Positions 5,867 to 53,045 of a stretch of DNA of 64,000 nt are shown piece after piece. The notes beneath the pieces were generated by a model. The model did not search any database, was not told where the DNA came from, and saw nothing but the letters and a program-made list of their open reading frames with translations. Source of the DNA: Octopus sinensis (Eukaryota); NCBI RefSeq assembly GCF_006345805.1, contig NC_043005.1, positions 90,892,001-90,956,000 on the forward strand, in the 5' to 3' direction. A program made the translations under genes and the position numbers. Each line of letters begins with the position of its first letter. Position 1 is the first letter of the stretch.

Positions 5867-8800
5867 GTAAGTTACTCTGAGGCTTTAAAATGTGAATGAC
5901 ATGTTTTTTGCTGTATATAGGAATGGCCATTTTGACAGTTTAGCCAATAAAAACACACACTATATATTTTGTGTGACTTTGCTTCAGTGTTATTTATTTT
6001 TTACATTAATCTTAATACAAAATACAAAATGGCTGACAGTTAGTAAGGAGAGACACACAAATAAGAAAGAAGAAAGCAAAGGACCACTGATGCGGTCACA
6101 GGAGTGTGAAGAAAGAACTCTGGCTGAAATAAGATTAAGATTAATGTAAAAAATAAATAACACTGAAGCAAAATAACACCAAATATATAGTGCGTGTGTT
6201 TTTATTGGCTAAACTGGCAAAATGACCATTCCGAAATACAACAATATATGTTTCAATACACGATTTCACATGAAAAATTTTGCAAAACAAACATATAAAT
6301 GACATGTTTTTTATTTTATTTTATTAAGAGCTCTTCAATGAAATTTTTGTATCTTTTGAGTTCTCCATGAAACTTTATTTATTTATTGTTTTCCATTACC
6401 TTTTCTATATTTTCCAATGTATTATGGATATATTAGATTGTTTCCCCTTATGGATCCAGTTAGTGGATATCTTGTTAATAACAGTTGTTAAGAAGATTCT
6501 CTGGTTATCAACCTTCTGGTAGTGAAAGGATGTGATTTCATTTTAATATATCTTTTATCTTGGTATTGCACTAATCTGCTTCTCATCATTGGCATTGGTG
6601 ATGACTATGATCTCATTTGGCTTGATGGGACTTCTCAAGCACATATCACTAAAGGTCTCAGTCACTTGTCATTGCCTCCGCGAGGCCCAACATTCAAAGA
6701 TCATACTTCATCACCTTGCCCCATGTCTTCCTGGGTCTACCTCTTTTATAGGTTCCCTTCATCATTAGAGTGTGGCACTTCTTCACATAGCTGTCCTCAT
6801 CCATACACATCACATGACCATAGCAGTGCAGTCATCTCTCTTGCACACCACATCTGATGCCTCTTATGCCCAACTTTTCTCTCAGAACACTTACACTGTT
6901 GTGCATGCACAGACATTACACATCCAGCAGAGCATACTAACTTCATTTCTTACAAGCCTATGCATGTCCTTAGCAGTCACAGCCCATGTTTGACAGCCAT
7001 GTAGCATGGCTGTTCACACACAGGCATCATACAGTACCTTTCACTCTGAGAGGGAGGCACTTTGTTACCAGTAGAGGTAGGAGATCTCTGAACTTTGTCT
7101 AGACTATTCTTATTCTAGCAGTGATGCTCTTGAAGCATCCATCCTTGCTACTGACTTGGTCACCTAGGATGGTATTGACTGCTTCTAGTTTCCATTTAAC
7201 GGAGTCTGTTTACTGTACATTTTTAGTGTTTATTGTAACTGTGCACCTTCCACACAGGAAAACTATTTTTCCTGTTAACCTTCCTCTGATATTACTGCAA
7301 CTGTTATGTGTCCATAGCTTACACTGGATACATTTTATGGAGTTTCTACCTACACTTTTTCCACAGATCAAGCAGGGTCATCTACCTGAAGGGATTTGTG
7401 ATTTGTCTGCTCTCCTACTTACTAAAATTTTGTTTTTTGTTAGATTGACTCTTAGGCTCTTTGATTCCACAGCTTGCTCCCATGTCTGAAATTTCTTCTC
7501 TAGTTCTTGTAGTAATTTGTATTAAATAAAAACATTATGCCTACCTGGAGAAGACAATGAGAAACGCCCCAATATGTCTATATATCTACCTCTAATAAAT
7601 AGTCATATGAAGCCTACAATTCTCTATGGATGCAGCTATTTCTAGCCAGTAAAAACTGGCTAGAAATAGCTGCAAAATACCCTCCAGTCACACCTGCTTT
7701 AAAAATGGAAGTACACATATTGAAAAAGATAGGATTGTCATGGCTGGAAAACCTTTGATTGATATTTAGGCTGACCTAGAGCCAAACAACAGGAAAATAC
7801 AAAAGCAATATGATTATAAAACAGTTAAGAATAAATAATTTGTTTCATTTTTTTAAACTTTTTACCCATTTTTAAAACTTCTTTCATTGCAGGAAGACCA
7901 TTTGCACTGCATGTAACTAATGCAACTGAAACAAGTATAAGTGTGTCGTGGAACGTAACAGAAAATATTAAACAATTTATGGTCAGCATAGATTGCTGTA
8001 ACCAGAAGTATAAGGATTTTATAGTCAACACTACCAGTACAACGATTACAAACCTCACATGTAGTGGGTGCTGTTATGATATAGCAGTAAAAAGTCTCTA
8101 TGGCAATAATAAATCCAGTCAACCAATAAGTACAACTAATTATACTGGTAAGTACTTAATTATTGTTACTGTTTATGTTGTTGATGTATTTTGATGGGGC
8201 ATGATGGCTGTGATGTTAAGGTGTTGGACTAATGATCTGTAGGATCATGAATCCAAACCTTACTACTGCCATCATGTTATGCATAGCAATTGCCTTAGTG
8301 TGCCTGACTGACATTAAATCAATGTTTAATACTTGGCAGGTTGCTCAACTGTAAGACTAGTATTCCTACATTATTTACATTATTTACATTTGACGGATAT
8401 TTGTCCTCATCTTGTTTGTTGTGAACACAACGTTTCAGCTGATATACCCTCTGGCCTTCTTCAGGTGTCTTGGTGAAATTTCGAACCTGGGTTCTCATTC
8501 CTAAGGTTCTCTTCAGAGTAGCAAAATTCAGGTTCTTTTTTATTTTCAGGCAAGTTGACAAGAGCAGTAGCTGAATTGCTGGCTTTATTTTGCATCATTT
8601 ACAACAAACAAACTAACTTTGCCCTACAAAGGCAGGTGGCTCTTCCTGCCTTACTGCATTGACTATTCGAAAAATAAGCATATGGACTTAAATAATTTTA
8701 CTTAAATAATTTTTTCTCTGAAATTAATAAAAATTACTGGGGCTATACATGAAAAGAGTAGGCTTAAAATTAGATGGGCTTATTTTTGGAAAAACTCAGC

Positions 8801-12055: not shown

Positions 12056-13685
12056 TGTGTACGAACAGCTATGCTACATGGCAGTGAAACATGGGCCGTG
12101 ACTGCTGAGGACATGCGTAAGCTCGTGAGGAATGAAGCCAGTATGCTCCGATGGATGTGTAATGTCGTGTACTTACTCGACAGAGCGTTAGTACTTTGAG
12201 AGAAATGTTGTACCTAAGAAGCATCAGTTGTGGTGTGCAAGAGAGACGATTGCGCTGGTATGGTCATGCGGCGAGAATGGATGAAGATAGGTGTGTGAGA
12301 AAGTGCCAATCCCTAGCAGTTGAGGGAACCCATGGAAGAGGTAGACCCAGGAAAACCTGGGACGAGGTGGTGAAGCACGACCTTCGGACGTTAGGTCTCA
12401 CCATGGAAATGACTAGAGACCGAGACCTATGGAAGTATGCTATGCGTGAGAAGACCCGGCAAGACTAGTGAAGCCATAACCCGTGGCCCCTACCTGGGAC
12501 ATAGTCAGTCCACCTGTGCATACCTTCCTTCTTGTGACACTTGGGAAGACCTGTTGAGGCAAGTGAAAATCAAAATCAAATCAAATCAAATCAAACCAAA
12601 TCAAAATAGATGAACATCATTGGAATTTGTATCCTTGTGGTACCAGTGCCGGTGGCACATAAGAAAACCATCCGAACGTGACCGTAGCCAGTACCGCATC
12701 GACTGGCCTCCGTGCTGAGGGCACGTAACAAATACCATCGAAGCGTGGCCGTTCGCCAGCCTCGTCTGGCACCTGTGTCGGTGACACGTAAGAAAACACC
12801 ATCCGAGCGTGGCCGTCTGCCAGCCTCGTCTGGCACCTGTGTCGGTGGCACATAAAATCACCCACTACACTCTTGGAGTGGTTGGCGTTAGGAAGGGCAT
12901 CCAGCTGTAGAAACACTGCCAGATCTGACTGGCCTGGTGCAGCCTTCGGGCTTGCCAGACCCCAGTTGAACCGTCCAACCCATGCTACCATGGAAAGCGG
13001 ACGTTAAACGATGATGATGATGATGATATATATATATATATATATATAAGAATTTTTGTGTAATAAGATAAAAAAACCAAGGCTGTGTAGATATTAGAGC
13101 ATTTATAGATAGAAGGTCTTACAGCTGTTTCTAGGATATTAATTAATAATATCTCTTCATCGGAGACAGTGTGAGAGGAAAATTAAGTCATAGTTAGTTT
13201 CGATGTGATACAAAATAGAGAGTGAGGTGGAGGAATATATATATATATTAATCAAAGTGTACAGTATTCTATATCTATTACAGCCAATTTTACCAGTTGG
13301 TTTCATACTAGGGATTCGACAGAGTGTTACGTAACAGTCTGATTAAGTAACTCTTCACTCATCAGAAGTAGCCACTATGGAATGAAATATGGCAACTATA
13401 TAAATATATATATATATATATATATGGAATAATTACTCTGAAGTACAGTGTAGAATATATTGTATAAAGGGTCGTAGGTAAGGCCAAAACAATTGAAAGT
13501 AAATGTAAGGTAAATCACACGAAAACAAATATATGAGTTAATGCATACAAAAGTTCAAAATGCTATTTGTTTAATATTCTGGATAACTTTGTGTGTGTGT
13601 GTGTGCACATAATATATACACATGCACACACACACATATATATACACACATACATATATACATGCACATACACATACATACATAT

Positions 13686-15373: not shown

Positions 15374-15412
<39 letters not shown>

Positions 15413-15779
15413 TTTATAGAAAAACAAAAGACGAAGACAGGTGTATGAACAACAAGCAAGTGTTTTAGTTTGACACTCAGGAAAAATGAATTAGTCTTTT
15501 ATGTTTCAAGCTTATGCTCTTCAGCAGAAAGGAATAAGAGAAATTAAACAGAGTGAGAATGAAAAAAACTTGTAGATTTCAAAGGTCCAACATGGCAAAT
15601 ATACATATATATATTACTTATTATACTGACCCAATGTTGGACTTTCTTGATAACATGCATTGTAATATCAACCAGTCTTCAATTATTATCAGAAAGAGCT
15701 ATAAAGATAAGACTTAATATATTTACATTCATATCATACAAAGCCTCTTAAAAATACACGTTAATGTGTTTGTGAGTGA

Positions 15780-15818
<39 letters not shown>

Positions 15819-18800
15819 TGTGTGTGTGTATGTGTGTGTATGTATGTGTGTGTAAGTGAAGGCACATGTCTCAGAGGTTAGAGCATCAGGCTTACAGTTT
15901 GAGTTAGTGGGTTTCAATACCTGGACCAGGCTGTGTGTTGTGTTCTTGAGCAAAACACTTTATTTCATGTTACTCCAGTTCACTCAGCTGTAGAAATGAG
16001 TTGCAATGTCACTGGTGCCAATCTGTGTCAGCCTTTGTTCTCCCTTCGATAACATCGGTGGTGTGGAGAGGAGAGGCTGGTATGCATGGGTAGCTGCTAG
16101 TTTTTCATAAACAACTTTGCTCAGACTTATGCCTCAAAGGGGAAATTTCTACATGCAATCCCATGGTCATTCATGACTGAAGGAGGTTCTTTACCTTTTT
16201 ATAGGTACATTCACCACACAACCACACAAATACTCACACATACAGACTCACACACTTATACATTTATATATATGTACTAGAGTTATTTATTTATACAAAC
16301 AGATACATGAATAAATAGATAGTGAGAGAGATACAGAGAGAATGAGAAATATATATATACATCATCTGCTTTCATATTATATGTACAGAGTATTAACACT
16401 TTCCTTTAACATATTGCAGAACCTAATGCAGTGAGTGGTTTATCACACATAGTTAACCAAGGTGATATACATATCTACTGGCAGAAACCAAAAAATTCAA
16501 AAGTAAATTCGTATCAAATCACTGTTACTATTGAGAATCCATATATATATAATTGCACAAATACAACTACAAACATGACTTATTACATAATAAACGACTT
16601 TTTACCAGGTAACTATTTTAGTGACCTTTTCAGTTCTCATTTCCCTTTGTTTGGACATTCCTGAAATCCCTATTAATATTTTCTTTAATAACTAACTTAG
16701 CCTGTTTCTTTTTTATAACCTTTCTTAAGCAGAAATGATAGATCACTTATAGTATTTAATTTGAATTCAAATACTTATTTCTTTATTGTCCAAAAGGGGC
16801 TAAACATAGCGGGGACAAACAAGGACAGACAAAGGTATTAAGTCGATTACATCGACCACCAGTGTGTTCTTAATTTATCGACCCCGAAAGGATGAAAGGC
16901 AAAGTCGACCTTGGCGGAATTTAAACTCAGAACGTAACAGCAGATGAAATACCGCTAAGTATTTCACCTGACGTGCTAACGATTCTGCCAGTTAGCCGCC
17001 TATGCCAGCTCACCACCTATATTTGAATTTGAATTCAAATACTGTTAGGGCTATGTTTGGGGGTCTGTCAACAGTCTGAGAGGTGGTGGGAGGATACATT
17101 GAAATAATTATCAGGCATGTATTTGAGTTAATTGACTATACTTTTCACTCATCTAACCTATAAATTTATCACCCTTTTTTAATGTAAGAAATCATTTATA
17201 TAGCATCAACTGCTATTACTGCATCAATAACTACAAAAGTTTCAGCTTCAGTATTGTTTCTATATAGCAAAAGAATCTAATTGCTTTGTGTGAAATTTAA
17301 CCATTTCCATACCAACCTTCCAGTGAGCATCTCAGGTTCATTGATGAAAAACTAAATTTTTGGGAAGCCCATATTTAGATTAAGATTTTTTATCGTAATT
17401 TTATGCAACAATCTTTTATTTTTCTAAACACTAGCTTCATATCGAATTAAATGTAGTTATTTTGCAAAGTCTTTTGAAACTTTTTGCTATTTTCAAAATT
17501 AATATAAATACATAGACAGTGTGTTTCATTATAAATATGGTGACAAAAGGAATAGAATATTTATGGAATCCTTTAGATGTTCTGACAATGCTTATGGTTG
17601 GGTAGAGACAACGTTTTATTGGCATGATCTTTGAGTACAAAGAAATTTGTTAATGTGTAGTTATCTTGATAACCATTATGTGTATCTAAATCAAATATGG
17701 GGAACTGCTTACCTTCACTGAATTCGAAATCACCAACTAAGAAAGTCTTTAAAACCCATGTGAAAGACTGTCTAACTTTAAGACCTAAACAATAATTTAT
17801 TGTAAGTTACATGCCTATGAATTAGTAACATTAAAGATTCCCTAGTTTTTTCAGCACAAATGGAACTTACACGTTTTATATACTTAAAACTAAAAATTTC
17901 AAGATAAGAGGAATTCTGGATGATTTCTGTCTTTTTAGTAATTTGTCATAGACTGCTTTAATATTGTATAGTAAATACGGGCATAGTATATTTTATATTA
18001 CTTAATATGGTATCAGTCACTTGAATTAAATGGCTGTTGCTTATCTATTATTGTTTAACTAAATAAGACTATAATTTAAAGACTTACCAGATGTGACCAC
18101 ATTATCTAATGTGTATTTCCTTTTTTAAAATAACAGGGTGATGTTTAAGGAATCTTTGACAGCTAATTGTAGAGGCTCTCTTGATTAGCTTGATGATGTT
18201 GCTCACGTATTTGCTGTTGAAAAACAAGTCGTCATTATTCTTATCCTCATTAACAGCAGCATTATCTTCAGTTTCTAATTCATTTTTCACAGATGCAATT
18301 GCTCACTTCAATTTAATTAAATTATAATCAAACTAATCTGTCTGCTTCAAATTTAATATAAAAGCTTTTAATCTGACCCTGGGCAACCACACTTCAAGTT
18401 TCACAATTATACAATACAAAACAATTGCAGCGTGGAAGGTGTTTACAAGCCATGCAGCACAAAGTTTTGTCAGTGAACAGGTCGTGGTCTCAAAGCGACG
18501 AAAATATTTTGACAAATTAAATTTAAATGTTGAAGTGAATCTAACGGTTTTTGTGTGTTTCTTAAATGGGTTATAAACACCTTCCACACTGCAACTGTTT
18601 TCGTTCCAGCACACAATCTCAGATCAGATCACTTGCTATTCAAGTACATCTCCGTAATTATACAATAGTTTATGGACAAAAAAATGGTATTCTTGACAAC
18701 ATATTCCAGAAGCTGATTTGGTCAGACACAGTTTGGGGTTCAAATTCATTTCATGTCTGTTTTGCCTTTCTGTACTTTAAGTTTAATAAAGCATGTAACA

Positions 18801-21800: not shown

Positions 21801-24776
21801 AGTCTATTTTAATCATTTCTATTTTAATATATATTTCAGGCATTTGATATCATCAAATTATTTTAGACTATGTTCTACAGAGCTACAGGTGCTAAATTAT
21901 TGATCAAATGTTATAATTTACATACCTGTAGGTGATGCATTTTAACCTAAATATTCTCTGCTGATACTATCATAAATTTAATACAATGTTCTTTTCTATA
22001 AGTGTGTGTGTGTGTGTGTGTGTGAAATTTATAGAAAAACAAAAGACGAAGACAGGTGTATGAACAACAAGCAAGTGTTTTAGTTTGACGCTCAGGAAAA
22101 ATGAATTAGTCTTTTATGTTTCAAGCTTATGCTCTTCAGCAGAAAGGAATAAGAGAAAATAAACAGAGTGAGAATGAAAAAAACTTGTAGATTTCAAAGG
22201 TCCGACATGGCAAATATATATATATATATTACTTATTATACTGACCCAATGTTGGACTTTCTTGATAACATGCATTGTAATATCAACCAGTCTTCAATTA
22301 TTATCAGAAAGAGCTATAAAGATAAGACTTAATTATATATTTACATTCATATCATACAAAGCCTCTTAAATACACGTTAATGTGTTTGTGTGTGTGTGTG
22401 TGTGTGTGTATACTTACAAATTAATTTTTACTTATTCCACCATGAGATTAATTGCATACAGTTAAGCAGAAATTGATGAGGGCTAGGCATCAAGATGTGG
22501 TGAGTCTTACAATAGAGAAAAATTATAGCAGCATCCATTAGCTTTAGAAAAGATATAGTCATAGAGAACTATAGAGAGAGAGTTCAAGCTAGTAATTCAA
22601 ATTGAGGAAACATCACAATGTGCAAGTGGCTATAATGGTCCTAGAGTGCACTTAAGTGAAGATTTTGTAAAAAATGACAGACTGGAATTGGTAGCTTTTG
22701 GTTCCTAGTTTGTCACACTCTCCAGTGGAAACCTAGAGTACTACAAAAATTTTTATTTTAGCAGAACTTGGGATCTGCTCTGTAAGCATTATTACTCCAT
22801 ACCAGGCTTGTTCAATACTGTCTTGGCAGCCATCTGTTGCAGCTGGCAGCAAACCAGAAGCATGGAGCAGTGACACTGAAGATGAAAGATTCAACAATTG
22901 GTACAAAAAAAAAAAATAATAACTTCAGGCACATAACTCTCCAAAAGTTGAAGACTTTGGTAAAGATGCTAATTAAGAGGCTGTCATTTATCATTGTTGG
23001 TGTTTTCTATGATGCATGAAGTTGTATGCTCTCAAATATTTCTATTCAGGTCAAGTTCCACTTTATGTGATACATTGTAGACTAGGCCAAGAATAGATCT
23101 GATTTTCATGAATAGATCTGATCAATACAGATCAGTATAAAACTTACATAAAAATTGGAAATTTCTACATAACAGCTATCCTTAGAACTGATGGTTTCAG
23201 TCCCAGCTTCAGAAGCTGGATTACATCAATGTACCATGGCGTCTGTTCAGTGCTCAAACTAAATGGCCACTTCTCAGAACTGTTTTGCACCAAATCATAT
23301 TCTGCATATACCGATAGCATTACAATCATGGTTTTGGATGCTTCAGAGATAGTAGTCAACATCATACTGGAGGAGTACCAAGAGTGTACAGGAGTATTCA
23401 TCAACTGGGACAAGTCAGTGGGCTTGCAACTAAGCACCCAAAGAGGATAATGATGCTATTCAATGTCAGTTTCTGTTGCAGGACTCAGTCCAGTAAAATG
23501 AATTGCCATTGGTTAAGATGCTTTGGGTTTGGCTTCGATTGACTCTCCAGATGGATGAGAATTAAAAATAGGAAAGTAGTCAGTCATACACAAAAAGGAG
23601 TTGAGAGGAAGTTGTCTCTGGAATGTTTAAGCAGAAGTTGCTAAGACTTATAACATCTTAATGGATATTGCTGTCTGATTATTAAATCTTGTCCCCAGAA
23701 ACATCTGAGCATATTTTTCAATTTCTTACGATGGGAGAGATAGTAGTAGCAGTGTTTTTTTCTCTTTCTTTATCTCACAACCTCTTTTTCTTTTTTCCAG
23801 TTCCTGGTGTTGTAAACATCACCATCAGTGAAGCAACAGCTTTTAATGTCACTATTTCCTTAAGTCACCCAGAGACTTTTATGGGAGACATCCTTGGGTA
23901 TTTTATTGAGATTTACAAAGGTCAAAAGATGCCAACTGATAAAAAACCACTGAAAATATATCACATAAAATGTTATAACTGTTCACAGGTAAAGACCCAT
24001 GCATTTCAGTCTTACATATTTCTGTATTTCATAAACAATAAGCTTCGGGATGGGGGCTGGTTTAAACTGTTGATCAGTAGTTCAAATTTTGTTCTGTATT
24101 TACCTGACAAAACATGATACTGTACTTTATGGCTGTTGTTTAATCCCTGTGACAGCTCTGATGAAACAGACCTATGATTAACAGTGTTTTATCTGTAATA
24201 AACTCATCTTTTTATTTCTCCAAAACATTTTTGCTTTTAGGATAGCATTGCATTAACAAGGCATCATGGAGGCAAAGTGGCTGAGTTTCTTTTGAGCGTT
24301 GAGCCTCACAGAGGCAAAGTGGCTAAGTTCTCCAAATAGTCCAACCCACTTTGTACCTTGAAGGTCTACTTTGACACCTTTTTATCATTATTTATAACTC
24401 CTATTCTGCTCTGGTACCCTCTTTCATAGTTTACCCGTCTACTTTTTCTCTAAGCATAAAGCTTTCTCTCCCCCACTTGGAGTTTGTAGTCTTGCAAACT
24501 GCTTGATGGCTTCACAAGTGCTGGTGACACAAAAAAGAACTTTGTGAACACTGTAAAGTGGTTGGCATTAGGAAGGGCATTTAGCCATAGAAACCATGCC
24601 AAACAGACACTAGAATATGATGCAGTCATTAGGCCTATCAGTTCCCATCAAGCTACCCAGCCCTTACCAGTATGGATCTAGGATGTAAAACGATGATGAT
24701 TATATAAATGTGTGTGTGTGTGTGTCTATATGTACATACATACATACATACATACATACATACATACATACATACA

Positions 24777-24808
<32 letters not shown>

Positions 24809-25015
24809 AACTAGCAGAATAGCTCGGCATTGCTCGAGTTTGTTTCCTTTTTGACCCTTTAGAATTGAAATATTTGAAAAGTAAAAATTTTGCATTATGT
24901 AGCTTGTTATTCCCTTTAAGTTGACATTTTTCTGGTTGAAATACACTGAAAATGGTGACACAGCAGTCAAAAAATCGTATATGTGTGTATATTCATATAT
25001 TTATATGTATGTATG

Positions 25016-25068
<53 letters not shown>

Positions 25069-25724
25069 GGCAAATGTTTACCAGGTGTAAACCATTTGTT
25101 TTATTATCCAATACATATATATATATATATGTATATATGCACAAACACACACACTTCTATGTGAGGCTGCATATGAATATTCAATTGTTTGATCATTCTA
25201 TAGCTTAAGAAACAGAACGGGTGTAAAAGTATGTATTCTTGTTTTTCTCATTGATAGGCAAATGCTTCCAGACCTGACAGCTGTCCTTGTTCCCAACCAT
25301 GTAATAATATGCAAGAGAAAACTCTCCACAGCTTGGGAGAACACTTTTCTTTGAATTCACTGACTCCAGCTACATCTTACTTAATATCAGCCCAAGCTTA
25401 TACATCTGCTGGTTGTGGTAATATAAGTGAGAAAATCTTCATGACAAATGAAAGTAGTAAGTAGACAGAAGAGATTATGTGGTTAAGACAGTGAGATATG
25501 ACTGAGTGGTTAAGAAAGTAAAGGCCTTGCAGAATGGTTCAGCAGTTTGCATTACAGACATATATAATTCTTAGTTGGATCCCACTACATGACAGTTTGG
25601 GCTTGTATTCTCTACCGTAGCCCTCAGGTTTACCAAAACCTTCGCAAGTGAAATTTGTTACACAGAAACTGTTGGAAGCTGGTCATACACACACACACAA
25701 ACACACACACACACACACGAACAC

Positions 25725-25755
<31 letters not shown>

Positions 25756-27645
25756 TAATTTAGAAGGCTTGGAGGTGATATACAGATATTATATATTAGA
25801 AAAAATAAGGTATTCAGAGATCTGGATGGTTGTACATATACAAATATTTATTAACATGTCACATACTTTTACAAATCACATATAAGAGCTTTCATCTACT
25901 CTAATAGATTCTTCTGATTTAAATTGTGTGAATGGATTTGTTTCTTTTTATAGTATTAGTGAATGGGTTATGGTGGAGAGAAAGAGAGGGGGGAGAGAAG
26001 AGTAATGTGGAGTGTAAAGGGTAGGGAATGAGGGAGAGGAATGGAGAGATAGTGGAGGGAGAAAGTGAGAGAGAGTATGTGTGTTTGTGTGTGTGCATGG
26101 GTGTGTGGGCGTGTGTGCATGTGTGCGTGTGTGTGTGTGTGTGCCTGTGTATCTGAAAGTGTGCAAGAGAGGTGACTGTGCTGGTATGGTCATGTGATAC
26201 ATATGGATGAAGGCAGATATGTATAGAAATGCTGATTTTTTAACTGTGGAAGGAACACGGGGTAAAGGTAGACCTAAGAACATATGGGACGAGGTGGTGA
26301 AGCACGATCTTCAAACTTTGAGCCTCACAGAACTAACGACTAGTGACCAAGACCTTTGGCAATATGTTGTGCTTGAGAGAACCTGTCAAGCCAAGTGCAC
26401 CAGTAACTAGTTCTAATTTTTATGCTTGTTAAAAACTTGCAGTCATTCCCTATGTGTGCCCAGCTAAATGCCTGGAAAAGAATAATCGCTGCCAGAGCTT
26501 GATTTTCCTTTGATGCACTCCTTTGAAAAATCAATTAATTCTGTAAATAAAAGTTTTATCTAAATTATATCATGTTTTTGCCTGTAAGACATTATCATTA
26601 CTATTTTCTTTTTCTTTGTTTGTTTCAGCTCCATCTAAAGTGCAAAATCTTGTTATTAATATAACTGAAACTGAGGCTTATATGGAATGGCAAGAGCCCA
26701 AACATCCTAATGGAAAAATACAGTATTATTTGCTCTATCTCTACCATAATGATTCGCTTAGTGTATTAGGAAATAGCACTGAAAAGAACTTTGTGTTTGA
26801 AAATCTTGAACCATATCAAAATTATACAGTCAGTATCGTTGCCATGAATTCCCTGCCAGGTGAAAAATACACTCGAAAATTCAAGACAAAGATTGGTGGT
26901 AAATTGTTCTATTTTAATAATTCTTTTTATATTTGTAAATGAAATTTGTAAGAGTGATTTGCTGTACTTGATGAGATGCATCAAGCTAAGTAAAAATTGC
27001 TGCCTCTCACACATACAAGCTTGTTTTTTCAGGTGTCAGTGCCACATAAAATGCACCTGTGCCAATACTGCATAAACACACGCATGCCAGTGGCACATAA
27101 AAAGCACCAAGCACACTCTTTTAAGAGATTGGCCTTAGGAAGGGCATCCAGCTGTAGAAACCACACCACAGCAGACAGTTGGAGTCTGGACAGCTCTCTG
27201 CCAACCAGCTCCATGTCAAACCGTCCAACCCATGTCAACATGGAAAACAGACATTAAACAATGATAACGATGATGATGATGAAATGCATCTTCTGGTCAT
27301 TTGATTAGCATATCTTAAAAAGAGCTATGATATGTTTAACCCTTTGGTATTCAGATTACTTCATCAAATGTAATGCTTATTTGTTCGTATTGTTTTGAAG
27401 GCTTTGATATTTTAGTGAAGTGATTATTTATTTTTGAAATGACATTGTGGAGTAGGTGTGAGAGGCCAGATCTAGTCAGCTTGCATGTAAAACGGGCAGA
27501 ATATTTTGGGCTGGATATGGCCAGTTTAAATGCTAATGGATTAATAAGAGAACAAAGAGCTTTTGCCTTGCCAGATGCCTTTTTTGACAGTATATGATAT
27601 TGCATCTGTATAATCTATGTGTGTATACTTACACTTATTAGTGCA

Positions 27646-27717
<72 letters not shown>

Positions 27718-28804
27718 GTATATGCACCAAGATATTAAGACATATTTTCTTTTTCTTTGTTTGTTTCAGCTCCATCTAAAGTGCAAAATCTTGTTATTAA
27801 TATAACTGAAACTGAGGCTTATATGGAATGGCAAGAGCCCAAACATCCTAATGGAAAAATACAGTATTATTTGCTCTATCTCTACCATAATGATTTGCTT
27901 AGTATATTAGGAAATAGCACTGAAAAGAACTTTGTGTTTGAAAATCTTGAACCATATCAACATTATACAGTCAGTATCGTTGCCATGAATTCCCTGACAG
28001 GTGAAAATTGCACTCGAAAATTCAAGACAAAGATTGGTGGTAAATTGTTCTATTTTAATAATTCTTTTTATATTTGTAAATGTAATTTGTAAGAGTGATT
28101 TGCCATACTTGATGAGATGCATCAAGCTAAGTAAAAATTGCTGCTTCTCACACATACAAGCTTGTTTTTTCAGGTGTCAGTGCCACATAAAATGCACCTG
28201 TGCCAATACTGCATACACACACGCATGCCAGTGGCACATAAAAAGCACCAAGCACACTCTTTTAAGAGATTGGCCTTAGGAAGGGCATCCAGCTGTAGAA
28301 ACCACACCACAGCAGACAGTTGGAGTCTGGACAGCTCTCTGCCAACCAGCTCCATGTCAAACCGTCCAACCCATGTCAACATGGAAAACAGACATTAAAC
28401 AATGATAACGATGATGATGATGAAATGCATCTTCTGGTCATTTGATTAGCATATCTTAAAAAGAGCTATGATATGTTTAACCCTTTGGTATTCAGATTAC
28501 TTCATCAAATGTAATGCTTATTTGTTCGTATTGTTTTGAAGGCTTTGATATTTTAGTGAAGTGATTATTTATTTTTGAAATGACATTGTGGAGTAGGTGT
28601 GAGAGGCCAGATCTAGTCAGCTTGCATGTAAAACGGGCAGAATATTTTGGGCTGGATATGGCCAGTTTAAATGCTAATGGATTAATAAGAGAACAAAGAG
28701 CTTTTGCCTTGCCAGATGCCTTTTTTGACAGTATATGATATTGCATCTGTATAATCTATGTGTGTATACTTACACTTATTAGTGCAAGTGTGAGTGTGTG
28801 TGTG

Positions 28805-28859
<55 letters not shown>

Positions 28860-31800
28860 GTATATGCACCAAGATATTAAGACATAATGAAAATATTTTA
28901 TGCTCATTCATTTCAGGTTGATAATGTATTATCACCATGCTTCTGTTCATTTCTTATTGAAATATTTTTAACACTTTATGCATAGATTCTTCTTCAGATT
29001 ATCACTACATGCTTGGTTTATTTTCTCCTCCTTCACAGCACCAGAACCTGTAAACATCACTCTTGTCAATAGAACCAGTAAATCAATAACTATAAAGTGG
29101 AAATCCCTGCACCCCAATGGACCAATCAAAAAATATATTGTCAGCTGGAAAACTGTAAAAGAAAGTACGCCAAGGTCTATGAATACAACTAAGAAAAATA
29201 CTTATACCATAACTGATCTTGAACCCTGCAGAGATTATAAGATCAAAGTAGAAATCTGTAATACCAAATATTGTAAAGACAGTAAATTATTTCGTGCACA
29301 AACAAAGATTGGAGGTTTGTAAATATATTTATAATTACTAGCAGAACCAGTGAATATTTCATGCAATTAATAGTAAACCTATAGAGTTATTTCTGAAAAT
29401 TTTATCCAAAATGTCTGAAAGTGTATCCTGTGTTGTATAAGAATAGAAAGATAGTCACTCATCTGCTAATCATTGAAAAGTGAAAGAAATTGGAATACAA
29501 TGATTACTTAATACTCTTTATACATACATTTTATATACTTTATGCATAATTTTATAGTTGTAATACACAGTGCTCAGGTATTAAATATTCACTCATCTAT
29601 TTTCCCCCATAAACAAAAAAAAAATCACCATACTCTTTTACTCTGTTACTTGTTTCAGTCATTTGACTGTGGCCATGCTGGAGCACCGCCTTAAGTCGAG
29701 CAAAATACCCCAGGACTTATTCTTTGGAAGCCTAGTACTTATTCTATCGGTCTCTACTGCCGAACCGCTAAGTTACGGGGACATAAACACACCAGCATCG
29801 GTTGTCAAGCAATGTTGGGGTGGGGGAACAAACACACATACATATACATATATATGACAGGCTTCTTTCAGTTTCCATCTACCAAATCCACTCACAAGGC
29901 TTTGGTCAGCCCGAGGCTATAGTAGAAGACACTTGCCCAAGGTGCCACGCAGTGGGACTGAACCTGGAATCATGTGGTTCATAAGCAAGCTAATTACCAC
30001 ACAGCCACTGTCGATTATTTGTATTAATTCCAGTACTCAGCCAGTTGTGGGGCACATGGCTTAGTGGTTATGGATAATGTACTCATAATTGTAAGGTTGT
30101 GGCTTTGAATCCTGCAGTATGTTGTGTTTTTTGAGCAAAACACTTCATTTCACATTGCTCCAGCTAACTCAGCAAGCAAAAATGAGTAATCTTGCAACAA
30201 ACTGGTATCCTGACTGGGTTGGAGTGGAATATATATGTCACAGTATGCTGGAAAAGGGTCTGATGAACCTATGGCTCCTGCTGGACCTTTGATCTTGTTG
30301 ACTTAATTTACTATTTATTTTACCGGATCTCTGTTGAGTAATTAATATAGTTATATTGAGTTACCTCCCTTGATGCTGGTGTGTTTACGTCCCTGTAACT
30401 TAGTGGTTTGGTAAAAGAGACCGATAGAATAAGCACTAGGCTTACAAAGAATAAGTCCTGGGGTCGATTTGCTCAACTAAAGGCGGTGCTCCAGCATGGC
30501 CACAGTCAAATGACTGAAACAAGTAAAAGAGTAAAGAAACCCAAAAGAAAGTTAGGAAAATAAACTCTATATTTTGTGTATGCATGTATGTGCATCTCCC
30601 TGTGTGCATATGCATGTGTGTGTGTAAGAGCGAAAGATGGATGGAGATATATATATAGAGAGAGAGAGAGTTACATGTGTCTGTCAGGGCAGACAACTGG
30701 TTGTGCTTGAATTCCGTATTCTAGTTTCAAAGCACTCATAAACACATAGAGTAATGAGCTGTTAAGGAATGACTTGCTAACCAATTTACATGTAGTTGAA
30801 TGAACTGTAATATTGTAAAACTAGTACTGTGTCGAAATATGAGAAGCAGTCGTTTGGAAGGTAGAATGGCACCCAGCAAGTAGTGACACCATCATCATCA
30901 TCATCATCATCATAATCATCATCATCACTATAATGGTGATTGAAGTATTGGTAATAGTGTTGATGATGACATTGGTGATAATGATTATAGCCGTGATATA
31001 TTCTAAATATTCTTTTACAATATAGTACGTACATATTTTATTAAATGAATGTTTTATTATAGAATAAGGTTCTTTTATTCTAAATTTTTTTCCCTGTCAT
31101 CACAGTCCCACACCCGGCACGAAATGTTAATGCTAAGGCAGAGTCTGCAACAAGCATTCGTGTCTCTTGGGAGGAACCGATGCAGTACACAGGACCAACT
31201 ACATATATCATTCAGGGACAGTGTTTAAAGTCCTCAAGAATACTGAAGACTTTTCTTGGGCCATTCACTGTCTCAGGTGAGATATCATTTTGGTTTTTTC
31301 TTCTGATCATTTTGGATTTTTCTTCTCATTAAATCATTAAACAAAATGTCTTTCTTAAGTTGAAATCCTGCCAAAATCAACTTTGCATTTCATCTCACCC
31401 AAGCAATAAAATATAGTACTGGTCAGGTGCTTGTGGGATGGGGGGGTAATTTAATTGACTTACCCCCTCCTCCAAATATCTGGCCTTGTGCTTATGTTAG
31501 AAACAATTATTGCTTGTATTATCAGGGTACTAAATTTACAGGATTTTGTTATGTGTTCTTTTACATTCTGAATTAATTTTTTACCAGGGTCATTTATGTT
31601 ATTCATCCTTCTAGGATTAACTATATACGTCACCCAAAATATGTAGCGTGTACCTCTCCTAGAAATCAGATGCAGGCATGACTCTGTAGCTAAGAAGTTC
31701 TCTCTACAACCTTATGCTTCTCACTTCGATTCCACTTTGTGATGATATTTGTGGTATGTGTCATCTATAGCCTCAGTTGAGGATATAGCTTAAATAATGC

Positions 31801-50507: not shown

Positions 50508-53045
50508 TAAGAAAGTTTGTTTGGTAAAGCACGTGGTGAATATATAAGAAAATAGTAAAGTGTGAAAAAACGACAGAAGGCTTAAATGTTAAAAAATATA
50601 TATATTTGTGTCAAAATGTCTGGAGAATATTGGAAAACTTTTTTTTCCTTTCCTTAAAATGACATAATTTTAAAATTTTTAAAGAAATTACCGGTTTCGC
50701 GTGTAGCTTTTCAAATTTCTTGTGACCAGAAATTTGAAAAGCTACACGCGAAACCGGTAATTTCTTTAAAAATTTTAAAATTATGTCATTTTAAGGAAAG
50801 GAAAAAAAAGTTTTCCAATATTCTCCAGACATTTTGACACAAATATATATATTTTTTAACATTTAAGCCTTCTGTCGTTTTTTCACACTTTACTATTTTC
50901 TTATATATATATATATATATACATACTAGCTTAAGGTGACCTGCTCTACGCGCGGGTAAGAGTATGGTTGCTACTTTCTGTTGCTTCCTTTCGGCACGTA
51001 AAAAGCACCAACCATTCGTGGCCCCTGTCCCCCCCCCCCGGCACCTGTGCTGGTGGCACGAAAAACCCCCACTACACTCATGGAGTGGTTGGTGTTTGAA
51101 GGGCATCCAGCTGTAGAAGCACTGCCAGATCAGACTGGAGCCTGGTGCAGTCTCCTGGCTTCCCAGAACCCGGTCAAACCGTCCAACCCGTGCTAGCATG
51201 AAAAACGGACGTTAAACGATGATGATGATGATGATTCTCCCTCTTTGTTTCTCTCTCCTTTCTCTCTCACTTTCCCACTGTCTTACTCTTCCTTTCTCTC
51301 GGACTCTCCCTCGCTTTCTCTTACTCTATCTTTATCTATCTCACTCCCATTTATAAACAAAAGATCTTGAGTAAGTTAAGAAAGAAATATATTTTCAAAG
51401 ATCAATCATAAATATCAGGCAATGACAACGGAAAGGTCTGCTTCAAGGCAGACAGCAAAACACTAACATTTAAAAGGGAAAGACGAACTTGCTAGCTGAA
51501 TAAAAATAATAAAATATTGGAAACCAAAGTTTGAAGGGATAGAATCTGAGGATAGTAGAGTCACCATGGCTGGCATTTCTTAATGACGGACAGCAATATA
51601 GTGGCAGCTTAACGGCTGGCGTAAAATTTTGAACTTGATGTAAAAGAAAATTCCTAAACACCAAATTTTGAAGTGATTCTTTCTCATGACAGTAGACTCA
51701 CCATGGCAAGCATTCAAAACTTCTTCATCATGGACGGCAACACATTGAGGATTAAAAGGCTGGTGCAAATTTTTTAGCTTGATGTAACAGAGAATTCCTA
51801 AACACCCGCTCCTGTAAATTTTAATCCCCTTCCAGCCCCATTTTGACCCCTTTTCACTGTTAGGCAAATCAAACAGTGAAAAACATAAACCAAAACATAA
51901 AAATAAAAATATAATATACAAAATATATAAAATATAAAATTTTAAAATTTAAATTATTTAAATTTAAAATTAAAATTATTAATTTATATTTATAATTTTT
52001 TTTAAAATATATATAACTATCAAAAAGTATTAAAAAGTTGAATATACATAAATACAGATATATACACTTTGTATATATACATTATATATACATATTTATA
52101 TATAGAACACACACACATATATATAAATTAACCCAATAAATATCTCATTCATAATATTTGTTCTCATGATTGTGTGGTGATGGTTGTGGCGATGATAATT
52201 CTCTCTATGAATGCAGACAGACGTAGAGAGATAGAGAGAGAGAGAGAGAGTGTGAAAGCACTGTCGAAGGCGGGGAGGGGGAGATATAGAACACTGTGAA
52301 ATGACGTTATAAAGAGATAGTGAAGTATTTATAGGTATGTATATATATATATAGAGAGAGAGAATTATGAGTCAGAGGTTATGCAACTATCTGAGGGATG
52401 AATGCATCTGTAGGTGCTACTGGTGCATTACTTAACTATGTATAGGCCTTGCTGTAAGGTTAACAGTAGTTGTTGTTGTTAAGCAACAAGACGGGTAAGG
52501 GTGATTAGGTGATGGTCTAGGGCTTAGGGGCGGGAGACCCCAGACCTTGGGGAAAAAAAAAAAACTTTGGTCGTCTTGTTGTAGTTGAGGGTACATCGTT
52601 GACACCCAACACCACTGGGAGGTGGCTTCGAAGTCGCTGGAAATGGAGATCTCCAGATCCAAATTATTGAACAGCTAACAGTAGTTGGTAATTTAAGGGC
52701 AAACCATGATTTAATATATTCAGATAAGATTAGAGAAGAAATAGAGCAACATGAAACAATTACAAGTTGATCGTTAGTACTGAATGATCATAGTTTAATT
52801 ACGGTTAAGATAACATTCACGACGGTTTCAGTTTGTTAATTTTGAGGTAAACTTGCATTTATCTCGTTCCATGTAACAAACATCATCAGAATGGTTTGAA
52901 CTTTACCAGAGGAATATTGACAGAAGGTCAGAGGTTGAGAGGAGAAAAAAGGAAAAAGGAAGAGAAAAAAGAAAAGGAAAAGCTGTAAATGGAAACATGG
53001 AAAGCAGACATTAAATGACAGCGACAATGATGATGATGATATATA

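What the first reader, a model, noticed from the sequence alone, without database searches (positions are those of the whole stretch)
26603..28885. Duplicated FN3 exon whose six differences are all non-synonymous and change its N-glycosylation sites
Seen: the two 270-nt, phase 1-1 exons differ at 6 nt and none is silent (S>L, V>I, N>H, P>T, K>N, Y>C). Copy A has sequons NDS and NYT. Copy B loses both and gains a new sequon, NCT, which also adds an unpaired Cys. NIT and NST are shared. All 11 substitutions in the 1.14-kb unit fall in one 321-bp block (26755-27075); about 580 bp downstream and 150 bp upstream are identical. TAAGACAT marks the left flank, junction and right end, with 10 nt lost at the junction. 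Inference: microhomology-mediated duplication, followed by partial gene conversion and/or selection, producing two glycoforms of one ectodomain module. Being symmetric exons, they could be included together or as mutually exclusive alternatives. R3 RPTP ectodomain length and glycosylation are known to matter for exclusion from tight membrane contacts.
Basis: partly seen in the sequence, partly recalled or inferred. Interest (0 to 1): 0.8.

Follow-up and report, generated by a model that had tools for sequence, protein, structure and literature searches.

The report
Young FN3 exon duplication, octopus phosphatase
One exon that encodes a sugar-coated fibronectin-type module of an octopus receptor tyrosine phosphatase has very recently been copied in tandem; this is an ordinary kind of event caught early, in a gene whose whole outer part is evolving unusually fast.

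Summary
A 1,141-bp unit (26603-27743) is repeated at 27744-28885. Each copy holds a 270-nt phase 1-1 FN3 exon. All 11 substitutions fall in one 321-bp block, and 6 of them are exonic and all non-synonymous. TAAGACAT marks both ends and the junction, where 10 nt are missing.

The gene is an R3-type receptor tyrosine phosphatase. It is colinear with an Octopus vulgaris gene (1.3% intron divergence), which has a single copy of the unit with the two TAAGACAT repeats in the pre-duplication layout. The duplication is therefore lineage-specific or polymorphic, and microhomology-mediated.

Polarising with O. vulgaris and a further octopod shows that copy B carries 7 private derived changes. At two sites B shares derived states with O. 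vulgaris while A keeps the ancestral state. The block therefore holds two old allelic lineages set in young, identical flanks.

Six of six non-synonymous changes is not significant alone (P 0.14-0.26). It matches the whole ectodomain: 49 non-synonymous against 6 synonymous differences, with sequon turnover enriched (P 0.008).

Expression of copy B is untested. Its upstream context lacks copy A's branch-point-like motifs. Misassembly remains possible at about 10%.

The parts
25258..25456 (+). Exon 7, the second half of the preceding FN3 module. Its donor at 25456 is phase 1.
   Evidence: Mapped from the exact O. vulgaris exon chain, with AG/GT kept; sequence.
25684..25760 (+). (AC)n tract in the intron upstream of exon 8A. 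It is complementary to the (GU)n tracts after each exon copy.
   Evidence: Inverted repeats. Duplex energies are -125.3 and -121.5 kcal/mol with the two (GU)n tracts. Any function is speculative.
26585..26592 (+). Left TAAGACAT, the 8-bp direct repeat just outside the duplicated unit.
   Evidence: Present at the same place in O. vulgaris and in the outgroup contig L002.
26593..26602 (+). tatcattact. These 10 nt are present before unit A and absent at the A/B junction. They hold the only UnAy branch-point-like motifs 29-35 nt upstream of exon 8A.
26603..27743 (+). Duplication unit A (1,141 nt).
26629..26898 (+). Exon 8A: 270 nt, phase 1-1, one FN3 module with sequons NIT, NDS, NST and NYT. It keeps the ancestral N64 and P76.
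26755..27075 (+). Divergent block in unit A: 144 nt of exon plus 177 nt of intron. It holds all 11 A/B substitutions.
   Evidence: It has 5 mismatches against O. vulgaris.
27085..27284 (+). SINE-like interspersed repeat inside the unit, in the part that is identical between A and B.
   Evidence: About 8 copies at roughly 73% identity elsewhere in the window.
27647..27716 (+). (GT)35 tract of unit A. It ends 53 nt upstream of the exon 8B acceptor.
27736..27743 (+). Junction TAAGACAT, the last 8 nt of unit A. It is followed directly by ATTTTC of unit B.
27744..28885 (+). Duplication unit B (1,142 nt).
   Evidence: It maps to the same single O. vulgaris interval as unit A.
27770..28039 (+). Exon 8B: 270 nt, phase 1-1, an FN3 module with sequons NIT, NST and NCT. 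It has four private derived replacements (L42, I45, N79, C80) and shares H64 and T76 with O. vulgaris.
27896..28216 (+). Divergent block in unit B. It has 7 private derived substitutions.
   Evidence: It has 8 mismatches against O. vulgaris.
28788..28858 (+). (GT)n tract of unit B. It is the same length as A's tract apart from one inserted T at 28805/28806.
   Evidence: O. vulgaris lacks the extra T.
28878..28885 (+). Right TAAGACAT, the end of unit B, followed by the unique sequence aatgaaaat.
29039..29314 (+). Exon 9, the next FN3 module (phase 1-1). It is hyperdivergent from O. vulgaris.
   Evidence: 18 of 267 nt differ (16 non-synonymous, 2 synonymous) and there is a 9-nt indel. The flanking introns differ by 1.3-2.1%.

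Best explanation
This is a real and very recent 1.14-kb tandem duplication inside an R3-type receptor tyrosine phosphatase gene. The gene is the orthologue of the O. vulgaris gene annotated 'PTPRQ' and of the O. bimaculoides gene annotated 'tyrosine-protein phosphatase 10D'.

The ancestral single-copy locus, still seen in O. vulgaris, had two 8-bp TAAGACAT repeats 1,151 bp apart around constitutive exon 8. A template switch or unequal exchange between these repeats duplicated four things: the exon, 26 nt of its upstream intron, 845 nt of downstream intron (including a SINE-like repeat) and a (GT)35 tract. Ten nt were lost at the junction.

The 321-bp block in which the copies differ did not simply diverge after the duplication. 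It holds two older allelic lineages. Copy A keeps ancestral states. Copy B is closer to the O. vulgaris allele and carries seven further private changes. The flanks are identical and young. So either the duplication joined two different haplotypes, or one copy later received a patch from a divergent allele by gene conversion.

The all-non-synonymous pattern and the sequon reshuffling reflect a property of the whole ectodomain, which evolves at or above the neutral rate with frequent gain and loss of N-glycosylation sites.

If exon 8B is spliced in, the protein gains one 90-residue FN3 module carrying 3 sequons. Whether that happens is not known.

Shown: the anatomy, the single copy in O. vulgaris, the polarity of the changes and the gene-wide rates. 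Inferred: the mechanism of origin, the source of the block and any functional effect.
For: - Anatomy and statistics of the duplication.
- Gene identity: the only PDB hit of the juxtamembrane exon is Drosophila Ptp10D. Orthologues P0002 (O. bimaculoides) and P0151-P0153 (O. vulgaris) were found. P0151 has 1 Y_phosphatase domain and 7 fn3 stretches.
- Orthology: all 21 O. vulgaris exons map colinearly to the window with splice sites kept.
- Single copy in O. vulgaris: units A and B both map to L001 22033-23175. The orthologue proteins contain the module once.
- Pre-duplication state in O. vulgaris: TAAGACAT + tatcattact on the left and TAAGACAT + aatgaa on the right.
- Polarity: B is derived at 26755, 26763, 26867, 26869, 26964, 27004 and 27075, and also carries the T insertion. 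At 26820 and 26856, A matches the outgroup (and at 26820 also O. bimaculoides), while B matches O. vulgaris. The chance of two or more such coincidences by homoplasy is about 3e-4.
- Independent change on both copies: O. vulgaris has CCGT at 26962-26965, A has CTGT and B has CCAT. This fits two separate CpG transitions.
- Young flanks: 0 differences in 820 bp, including a hypermutable (GT)35 tract. At the mean divergence this has P = 2.5e-5.
- Gene-wide context: Nd 49, Sd 6, pN/pS 2.1 (P 0.044). pN is 1.41 times the intron divergence (P 0.015). Exons 2 and 9 diverge 3-5 times faster than their own flanking introns. Eight sequon differences occur among 45 replacements, against a 6.5% null (P 0.008).
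Against: - No reads, read depth or RNA could be examined, so neither the reality of the junction nor the use of exon 8B is shown.
- The block genealogy rests on two sites. At one of them (26856) O. bimaculoides has a third state.
- The window's species is not identified. If it is conspecific with, or exchanges genes with, O. vulgaris, then 'older than the split' only means 'old polymorphism'.
- Copy B's seven private changes exceed a neutral per-lineage expectation (P 0.005). An allelic origin does not explain this by itself. A mutation burst or selection may also be involved.
- pN/pS above 1 is only marginally significant and could partly reflect relaxed constraint.
Confidence: 0.6

Rival explanations
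1. Old duplication with concerted evolution. The exon was duplicated before the window's lineage and O. vulgaris separated. O. vulgaris later lost one copy by unequal crossing-over, keeping a B-like block. In the window's lineage the flanks were homogenised by A/B gene conversion, which left a 321-bp unconverted block.
For: The ((B, O. vulgaris), A) pattern at 26820 and 26856 follows naturally if the O. vulgaris copy descends from B. A single-copy recombinant would still carry the intact left flank with the 10 nt, as observed.
Against: It needs at least four events: the duplication, the loss, and two separate conversion tracts. The identical parts (26603-26754 and 27076-27743) cannot be covered by one tract between misaligned copies. 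O. bimaculoides (annotated protein) also has the module once, and the outgroup contig L002 shows only one copy in the roughly 600 nt it covers downstream of the exon. The two (GT)35 tracts are identical to each other but differ from the O. vulgaris tract.
Confidence: 0.12
2. Assembly artefact. A and B are the two alleles of a single-copy heterozygous locus that the assembler or a gap-closer placed one after the other.
For: The two blocks do look like two allelic lineages set in identical flanks. This is what a linearised heterozygous bubble would give. No read data could be checked.
Against: The junction is a novel sequence. An 8-bp repeat sits at the end of the unit and again 10 nt before its start. 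For arbitrary contig ends the chance of this is about 8e-4, whereas a biological microhomology event predicts it. The window has no N and long microsatellites are resolved, which suggests long reads that would span 1.1 kb. The extra T and the 10-nt loss are further copy-specific differences.
Confidence: 0.1
3. Mutation shower. Copy B was synthesised by error-prone replicative repair (MMBIR-type). Its private substitutions, the T insertion and the 10-nt junction loss all arose in that single event.
For: All unambiguously polarised private changes lie on B: 7 substitutions 152-472 bp downstream of the junction, the T insertion, and the deletion at the junction itself. B's branch is long (7 against 0-1 for O. 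vulgaris; binomial P 0.016-0.07; 7 against 2.1 expected, P 0.005). Two of the differences sit in tight clusters (26867/26869 and 26963/26964). MMBIR is reported to leave nearby SNVs and indels (PMC9609164).
Against: It cannot explain the two sites where B shares derived states with O. vulgaris, so it can only be part of the story. The adjacent pair 26963/26964 is better explained by one CpG transition in each copy. The number of tight pairs is not beyond chance (P 0.19).
Confidence: 0.15
4. The two exons are kept by selection as two glycoforms of one module, and are used together or as regulated alternatives.
For: Three sequon changes among six substitutions is nominally unusual (P 0.001-0.004). 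Sequon turnover is also enriched gene-wide (P 0.008). The ectodomain has pN/pS 2.1. In-frame exon skipping is annotated in the orthologue, where P0153 lacks exon 4. The duplication doubled one arm of a possible (AC)n/(GU)n stem, the layout proposed to generate mutually exclusive exons (PMC6071210).
Against: There is no expression evidence. The sequon test is post hoc. Nothing enforces exclusivity. Exon 8B lost the branch-point-like motifs and sits behind a (GU)35 tract, a context that promotes skipping in CFTR exon 9 (PMC2978352). Y80C removes a G-strand tyrosine and adds a lone Cys. The fn3 score of B is 3.4 bits lower than that of A. The duplicate is too young for its maintenance to be inferred.
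Confidence: 0.12

Closest known systems
Tandem exon duplications in animal genes, including those that became mutually exclusive exons (reviewed in PMC9013439; PMC9741552; mechanism model in PMC6071210)
   Same: Adjacent exons have equal length and phase. They were duplicated together with flanking intron and stay in frame when both are included. One arm of a potential intronic stem was duplicated with the exon.
   Different: Most described cases are ancient and have documented alternative use. This one is 99% identical, absent from the sister genome, and has no expression data. None of the usual enforcers of exclusivity is present.
R3 receptor-type tyrosine phosphatases (Drosophila Ptp10D/Ptp4E; vertebrate PTPRB, PTPRJ/CD148, PTPRH, PTPRO, PTPRQ)
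   Same: The ectodomain is heavily N-glycosylated and only FN3-type domains were found in it. There is one transmembrane segment and one PTP domain. FN3 modules are largely encoded by phase 1-1 exons. The juxtamembrane exon aligns end to end with Ptp10D.
   Different: Several FN3 modules here are split by extra introns. The PTP domain lies outside the window. The annotated O. vulgaris orthologue has Pro in place of the catalytic-loop Arg. The size-exclusion role known for CD148 and CD45 (literature) has not been tested for any mollusc protein.
Microhomology-mediated tandem duplication (replication slippage, FoSTeS or MMBIR)
   Same: The ancestral sequence has short direct repeats at both breakpoints. 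There is a small deletion at the junction. Extra point changes and a 1-nt indel lie on one copy near the junction (PMC9609164).
   Different: The microhomology is offset from the junction by the 10 lost nucleotides. Part of the copy difference is older than the event.
Duplications that place two alleles in cis ('permanent heterozygosity'), for example the ace-1 duplications of mosquitoes (from memory, not checked here)
   Same: Two allelic lineages of the same sequence sit side by side on one chromosome.
   Different: Here the scale is one exon inside a gene. The two-allele signal covers only 321 bp, and no heterozygote advantage is known.

Membership tests
R3 receptor-type protein tyrosine phosphatase | Extracellular region built only of fibronectin type III repeats | tested here: met
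   Five window exon sets hit only fn3-type families. Orthologue P0151 has 7 fn3 stretches and no other ectodomain family. The model of exon 8A is a 7-strand FN3 with pLDDT 84 and TM-score about 0.8 to solved FN3 structures.
R3 receptor-type protein tyrosine phosphatase | Single-pass transmembrane segment followed by a juxtamembrane region | tested here: met
   Exon 58601-58694 encodes the hydrophobic stretch [24 protein letters not shown] followed by HKK. The juxtamembrane exon aligns with Ptp10D residues 23-51. No dedicated transmembrane predictor was run.
R3 receptor-type protein tyrosine phosphatase | One (not two) intracellular PTP catalytic domain | tested here: met
   P0151 has a single PF00102 match at residues 1153-1383 and ends 21 residues later. 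The domain lies beyond the end of the window, so for the window's own gene this rests on colinearity with L001.
R3 receptor-type protein tyrosine phosphatase | Intact catalytic signature HC(X)5R | tested here: inconclusive
   O. bimaculoides has VHCSAGVGRTG. O. vulgaris has VHCSAGVGPTG, with codon CCT in L001. The window does not reach this exon.
Tandem exon duplication | Adjacent exons of the same length and phase with significant sequence similarity, absent as a pair in an outgroup | tested here: met
   Both exons are 270 nt and phase 1-1, with 264 of 270 nt identical. O. vulgaris DNA has a single copy, and the O. bimaculoides and O. vulgaris proteins contain the module once.
Mutually exclusive exon pair | Exactly one of the two exons is present in each mature transcript | not testable with these tools
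   No transcript data for the window's organism could be reached.
Mutually exclusive exon pair | A mechanism that forbids joint inclusion: a frameshift leading to NMD, or an intron too short for splicing between the pair | tested here: not met
   A+B, A only, B only and neither all stay in frame without a stop. The intron between the two exons is 871 nt.
Mutually exclusive exon pair | Competing RNA structures: one docking site and one selector per exon | tested here: inconclusive
   An (AC)n tract at 25684-25760 can pair with a (GU)n tract after each exon (-125 and -122 kcal/mol). It can also pair with a third tract upstream of exon A (-101 kcal/mol). No pairing would loop out B alone. Such microsatellites are common in the window.
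Microhomology-mediated tandem duplication | The same short sequence at both breakpoints in the unduplicated state, with one copy at the junction | tested here: met
   O. vulgaris has TAAGACAT at L001 22016-22023 and 23167-23174. The window has it at the left flank, the junction and the right end. A complication is the 10-nt loss next to the junction.
Gene-conversion or recombination patch | A tract whose genealogy differs from that of its flanks | tested here: met
   In the block, A and B differ at 11 sites and B groups with O. vulgaris at 2 of them. In the flanks, A equals B and both differ from O. vulgaris at 2 sites. The clustering has P 2.5e-5.

The most novel reading that the evidence does not exclude
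The duplication has fixed two long-lived alleles of one glycosylated FN3 module side by side on one chromosome. It lies in a receptor phosphatase ectodomain that is under diversifying selection for N-glycan site turnover. The animal could then make both glycoforms, or a longer ectodomain. Inclusion of exon A could be tunable through the (AC)n/(GU)n stem whose arm was doubled by the same event.
Probability: 0.1. Interest if true: 0.6.

Novelty: new member of a known kind. Interest (0 to 1): 0.35.

Why it matters
FN3 arrays of receptor phosphatases are thought to have grown by duplication of symmetric exons. Here one such step is seen almost at birth. The ancestral breakpoints are preserved in a sister genome, and the two copies carry different allelic lineages. 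This makes it a clean case for studying how a new domain repeat enters a gene, and whether it is spliced in at once.

The wider observation may be the more useful lead for cephalopod biology. The ectodomain of this gene diverges faster than its own introns, and N-glycosylation sites are changing preferentially. This points to a cell-surface molecule under unusual pressure. None of it is surprising in kind.

Tried and rejected
- The search for homologous proteins with the 401-aa spliced peptide gave no hit, although a 95%-identical O. vulgaris protein is in the same database. The exhaustive representative search was what found the orthologues.
- A metagenome scan for a 26-mer of the exon gave 0 hits.
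- I looked up the window's own exon-A and exon-B reading frames in Logan and NCBI contigs, each with TTG, ATG and GTG starts. None is on record, so no independent reads of the junction were obtained.
- The O. bimaculoides locus could not be fetched.
- Searching with P0055 found only itself.
- I tried to polarise the intronic sites with the SINE-like repeat. This failed because the repeat starts at 27085, just after the last difference.
- Rfam and tRNA scans of 25000-29500 found nothing above threshold.
- NAHR between the flanking (TG)n/(GT)n tracts is rejected as the origin, because those tracts do not coincide with the breakpoints.
- 'All six are non-synonymous, therefore selection on the duplicate' is rejected: P is 0.14-0.26, and exon versus intron density within the block gives Fisher P 0.55.
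- Strong purifying selection on the exon is also rejected: P is 1.8e-4 at omega 0.25.

Full report
**1. What is in the sequence**

The region holds a head-to-tail duplication. Unit A is 26603-27743 (1,141 nt) and unit B is 27744-28885 (1,142 nt). They are 98.95% identical, which makes this by far the closest long repeat in the 64-kb window.

Each unit contains a 270-nt open segment flanked by AG and GT, at 26629-26898 and 27770-28039. Both are phase 1-1 and both score as Pfam fn3, with E 8e-14 and 1e-12. An AlphaFold model of the exon-A peptide is a seven-strand FN3 sandwich. Its pLDDT is 84 and its TM-score to solved FN3 domains is about 0.8.

The units differ by exactly 11 substitutions, all between 26755 and 27075. 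They also differ by one extra T in copy B's (GT)n tract at 28805/28806.

The six exonic differences give S42L, V45I, N64H, P76T, K79N and Y80C. Copy A has sequons NIT, NDS, NST and NYT. Copy B has NIT, NST and NCT.

TAAGACAT lies at 26585-26592, 27736-27743 and 28878-28885. The 10 nt that follow the first copy (tatcattact) are missing at the junction.

**2. What exceeds chance**

| Feature | Result |
|---|---|
| All 11 substitutions within 321 of 1,141 bp | P = 2.5e-5 |
| The unit's terminal 8-mer recurring within about 20 nt of the other breakpoint | about 8e-4 |
| All six exonic changes non-synonymous | P = 0.14-0.26, not unusual |
| Exon versus intron substitution density within the block (6/144 vs 5/177) | Fisher P = 0.55 |
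| Strong purifying selection on the exon (omega 0.25) | excluded, P = 1.8e-4 |
| Neutrality (omega 1) | not excluded, P = 0.11 |
| Three sequon changes among six random substitutions | P = 0.001-0.004, chosen after the fact |

**3. The gene**

The first protein search found nothing. An exhaustive search then found a 1,403-aa protein covering the whole query. NCBI names it 'tyrosine-protein phosphatase 10D isoform X2 [Octopus bimaculoides]'. Three O. vulgaris isoforms are named 'phosphatidylinositol phosphatase PTPRQ'.

The O. vulgaris protein has seven fn3 matches, no other ectodomain family, and one Y_phosphatase domain. The window's juxtamembrane exon aligns end to end with Drosophila Ptp10D, its only hit in the PDB.

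I fetched the O. vulgaris locus as L001. I derived its exact exon chain and mapped all 21 exons that fall in the window, with every AG/GT kept. The duplicated exon is exon 8 of this model.

The window is colinear with L001 over 60 kb. Intron divergence is 1.29% (576 of 44,746 sites) and varies from 0.3% to 2.9% between 5-kb bins. The source is therefore a very close relative of the O. vulgaris reference. I could not identify the species.

**4. The duplication is absent from the sister genome**

Units A and B both align to one interval of L001 (22033-23175). All three O. vulgaris isoforms and the O. bimaculoides protein contain the module once.

O. vulgaris shows what the locus looked like before the event. 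It has TAAGACAT followed by tatcattact and the unit on the left. It has a second TAAGACAT followed by aatgaa on the right, 1,151 bp away. A template switch or unequal exchange between these two 8-bp repeats, with loss of 10 nt at the new junction, produces the window's structure exactly. It also argues against a misjoin of arbitrary contig ends.

**5. History of the 321-bp block**

I aligned A, B, O. vulgaris and a more distant octopod. The distant sequence comes from Logan contigs L002-L005, found through the 152-aa reading frame P0055.

- Copy B is derived at 26755, 26763, 26867, 26869, 26964, 27004 and 27075, and also has the T insertion.
- At 26820 (N/H) and 26856 (P/T), copy A has the outgroup state, and at 26820 also the O. 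bimaculoides state. B shares the derived state with O. vulgaris. Two such coincidences by parallel mutation have a probability of about 3e-4.
- O. vulgaris has CCGT at 26962-26965, where A has CTGT and B has CCAT. This fits one CpG transition on each copy, so both lineages have changed.

Within the block, B is therefore closer to the O. vulgaris allele than to A, and B has a long private branch: 7 changes against about 2.1 expected (P 0.005). Outside the block, A and B are identical over 820 bp, including a hypermutable (GT)35 tract. They differ from O. vulgaris at only 2 of 717 sites.

Block and flanks thus have different genealogies. The simplest account is a young duplication whose copies carry two old allelic lineages in a short patch. 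That could arise in two ways:

- the event joined two different homologues, or
- one copy later received a conversion tract from a divergent allele.

Given how variable divergence is along this locus, deep and shallow coalescence side by side is not surprising. An error-prone repair synthesis may have added B's private changes (PMC9609164), but it cannot explain the shared derived sites.

An old duplication with loss in O. vulgaris and two later conversion tracts is possible but needs more events.

**6. Selection**

Between the window (with exon 8A) and O. vulgaris:

- There are 49 non-synonymous and 6 synonymous differences. pN is 1.82%, pS is 0.85%, and the ratio is 2.1 (binomial P 0.044).
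- pN is 1.41 times the intron divergence (P 0.015).
- Exon 9, next to the duplication, has 16 non-synonymous and 2 synonymous differences plus a 9-nt indel, which is 6.7% divergence. Its flanking introns are at 1.3-2.1%.
- Exon 2 is at 3.5%, against 0.67% in its flanks.
- Between O. vulgaris and O. bimaculoides, the ectodomain is 81% identical at the protein level and the transmembrane plus cytoplasmic part is 93% identical.
- Eight N-glycosylation sequons differ among 45 replacements. Random non-synonymous changes would alter a sequon 6.5% of the time (P 0.008, or 0.022 without the site shared with the A/B comparison).

So there is moderate, replicated evidence that sequon turnover is favoured, or at least tolerated, in this protein. 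There is no evidence that the duplicate pair is specially selected.

**7. Would exon 8B be used?**

All four combinations (A+B, A, B, neither) stay in frame, and the A-B intron is 871 nt. Nothing forces mutual exclusivity.

The splice sites proper are identical, but the contexts are not. The only UnAy motifs 29-35 nt upstream of exon 8A lie in the 10 nt that are missing before 8B. No such motif occurs in the 70 nt before 8B, and a (GU)35 tract ends 53 nt upstream of it. A (UG)m(U)n tract before CFTR exon 9 promotes skipping through TDP-43 (PMC2978352).

An (AC)n tract in the upstream intron could pair with the (GU)n tract after either exon. This is the 'one docking site, two selectors' layout proposed to arise from such duplications (PMC6071210). 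However, a third competing tract exists, no pairing isolates B, and these microsatellites are common here.

In the model, S42 and V45 lie in strand C', N64 opens strand F, P76 is in the FG loop, and K79 and Y80 are in strand G. B scores 3.4 bits lower than A against fn3. Use of B is an open question.

**8. Verdict**

The microhomology origin and the need for conversion or recombination hold. Selection acting on the pair, two expressed glycoforms and alternative use are not shown.
- The event is a new member of a well-known kind, tandem duplication of a symmetric domain exon. It was caught very early, in a gene with a fast-evolving glycosylated ectodomain.
- A misassembly of two alleles cannot be excluded without reads. 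I put it at about 10%.

Noticed in passing
window 29039-29314 (exon 9) and 7893-8147 (exon 2), compared with L001: These FN3 exons diverge from O. vulgaris 3-5 times faster than their own flanking introns. Exon 9 is at 6.7% with 16 non-synonymous and 2 synonymous differences plus a 9-nt indel. Exon 2 is at 3.5%, against 0.67% in its flanks. Gene-wide pN/pS is 2.1.
   Followed up: partly
L001 82512-82529 (O. vulgaris, outside the window): The annotated O. vulgaris orthologue reads VHCSAGVGPTG. The invariant Arg of the HC(X)5R catalytic loop is Pro (codon CCT in the assembly). R>W in FWRMIWE and R>H before KNRY also occur. O. bimaculoides has the canonical residues. This may be a pseudophosphatase in the making, or an individual variant.
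   Followed up: partly
window 25684-25760, 26075-26150, 27647-27716, 28788-28858: One (AC)n tract and three (GU)n tracts lie on the same pre-mRNA. Predicted duplexes are -101 to -125 kcal/mol. Pairing could loop out exon 8A alone or both copies together.
   Followed up: partly
window 58593-58601: The transmembrane exon has two acceptors 6 nt apart (cag|ATAAAG|ACC). The O. bimaculoides protein includes the two extra residues (DK) and the O. vulgaris protein does not.
   Followed up: no
L001 exon 4 = window 16420-16608: O. vulgaris isoform P0153 skips this 189-nt exon (63 aa, half of an FN3 module). In-frame exon skipping in the ectodomain is therefore already annotated for this gene.
   Followed up: no
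window 50540-50908: A 369-bp stretch matches its own reverse complement at 99% identity, making it a near-perfect palindrome.
   Followed up: no
window 15387-15793 and 22002-22409: A 410-bp dispersed direct repeat at 97% identity lies 6.6 kb apart in two introns of the gene. It is the second closest repeat pair in the window.
   Followed up: no
window 12163-12465 and 26198-26407 (+ strand): Open frames resemble the C-terminal end of a non-LTR retrotransposon reverse transcriptase (…[17 protein letters not shown]…). The second lies 200 bp upstream of the duplicated unit. Neither had a Pfam hit.
   Followed up: no
window 26603-27640 (outside the block) compared with L001: The identical parts of the unit differ from O. 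vulgaris at only 2 of 717 sites (0.28%), against a 1.29% mean. The 15-20 kb bin is also at 0.3%, while other bins reach 2.9%. This is very uneven divergence, as expected with much shared ancestral polymorphism or gene flow.
   Followed up: partly
tool behaviour: The word-indexed protein search returned nothing for a 401-aa query that is about 95% identical to a protein held in the same database. The exhaustive search was needed to find the orthologues.
   Followed up: no
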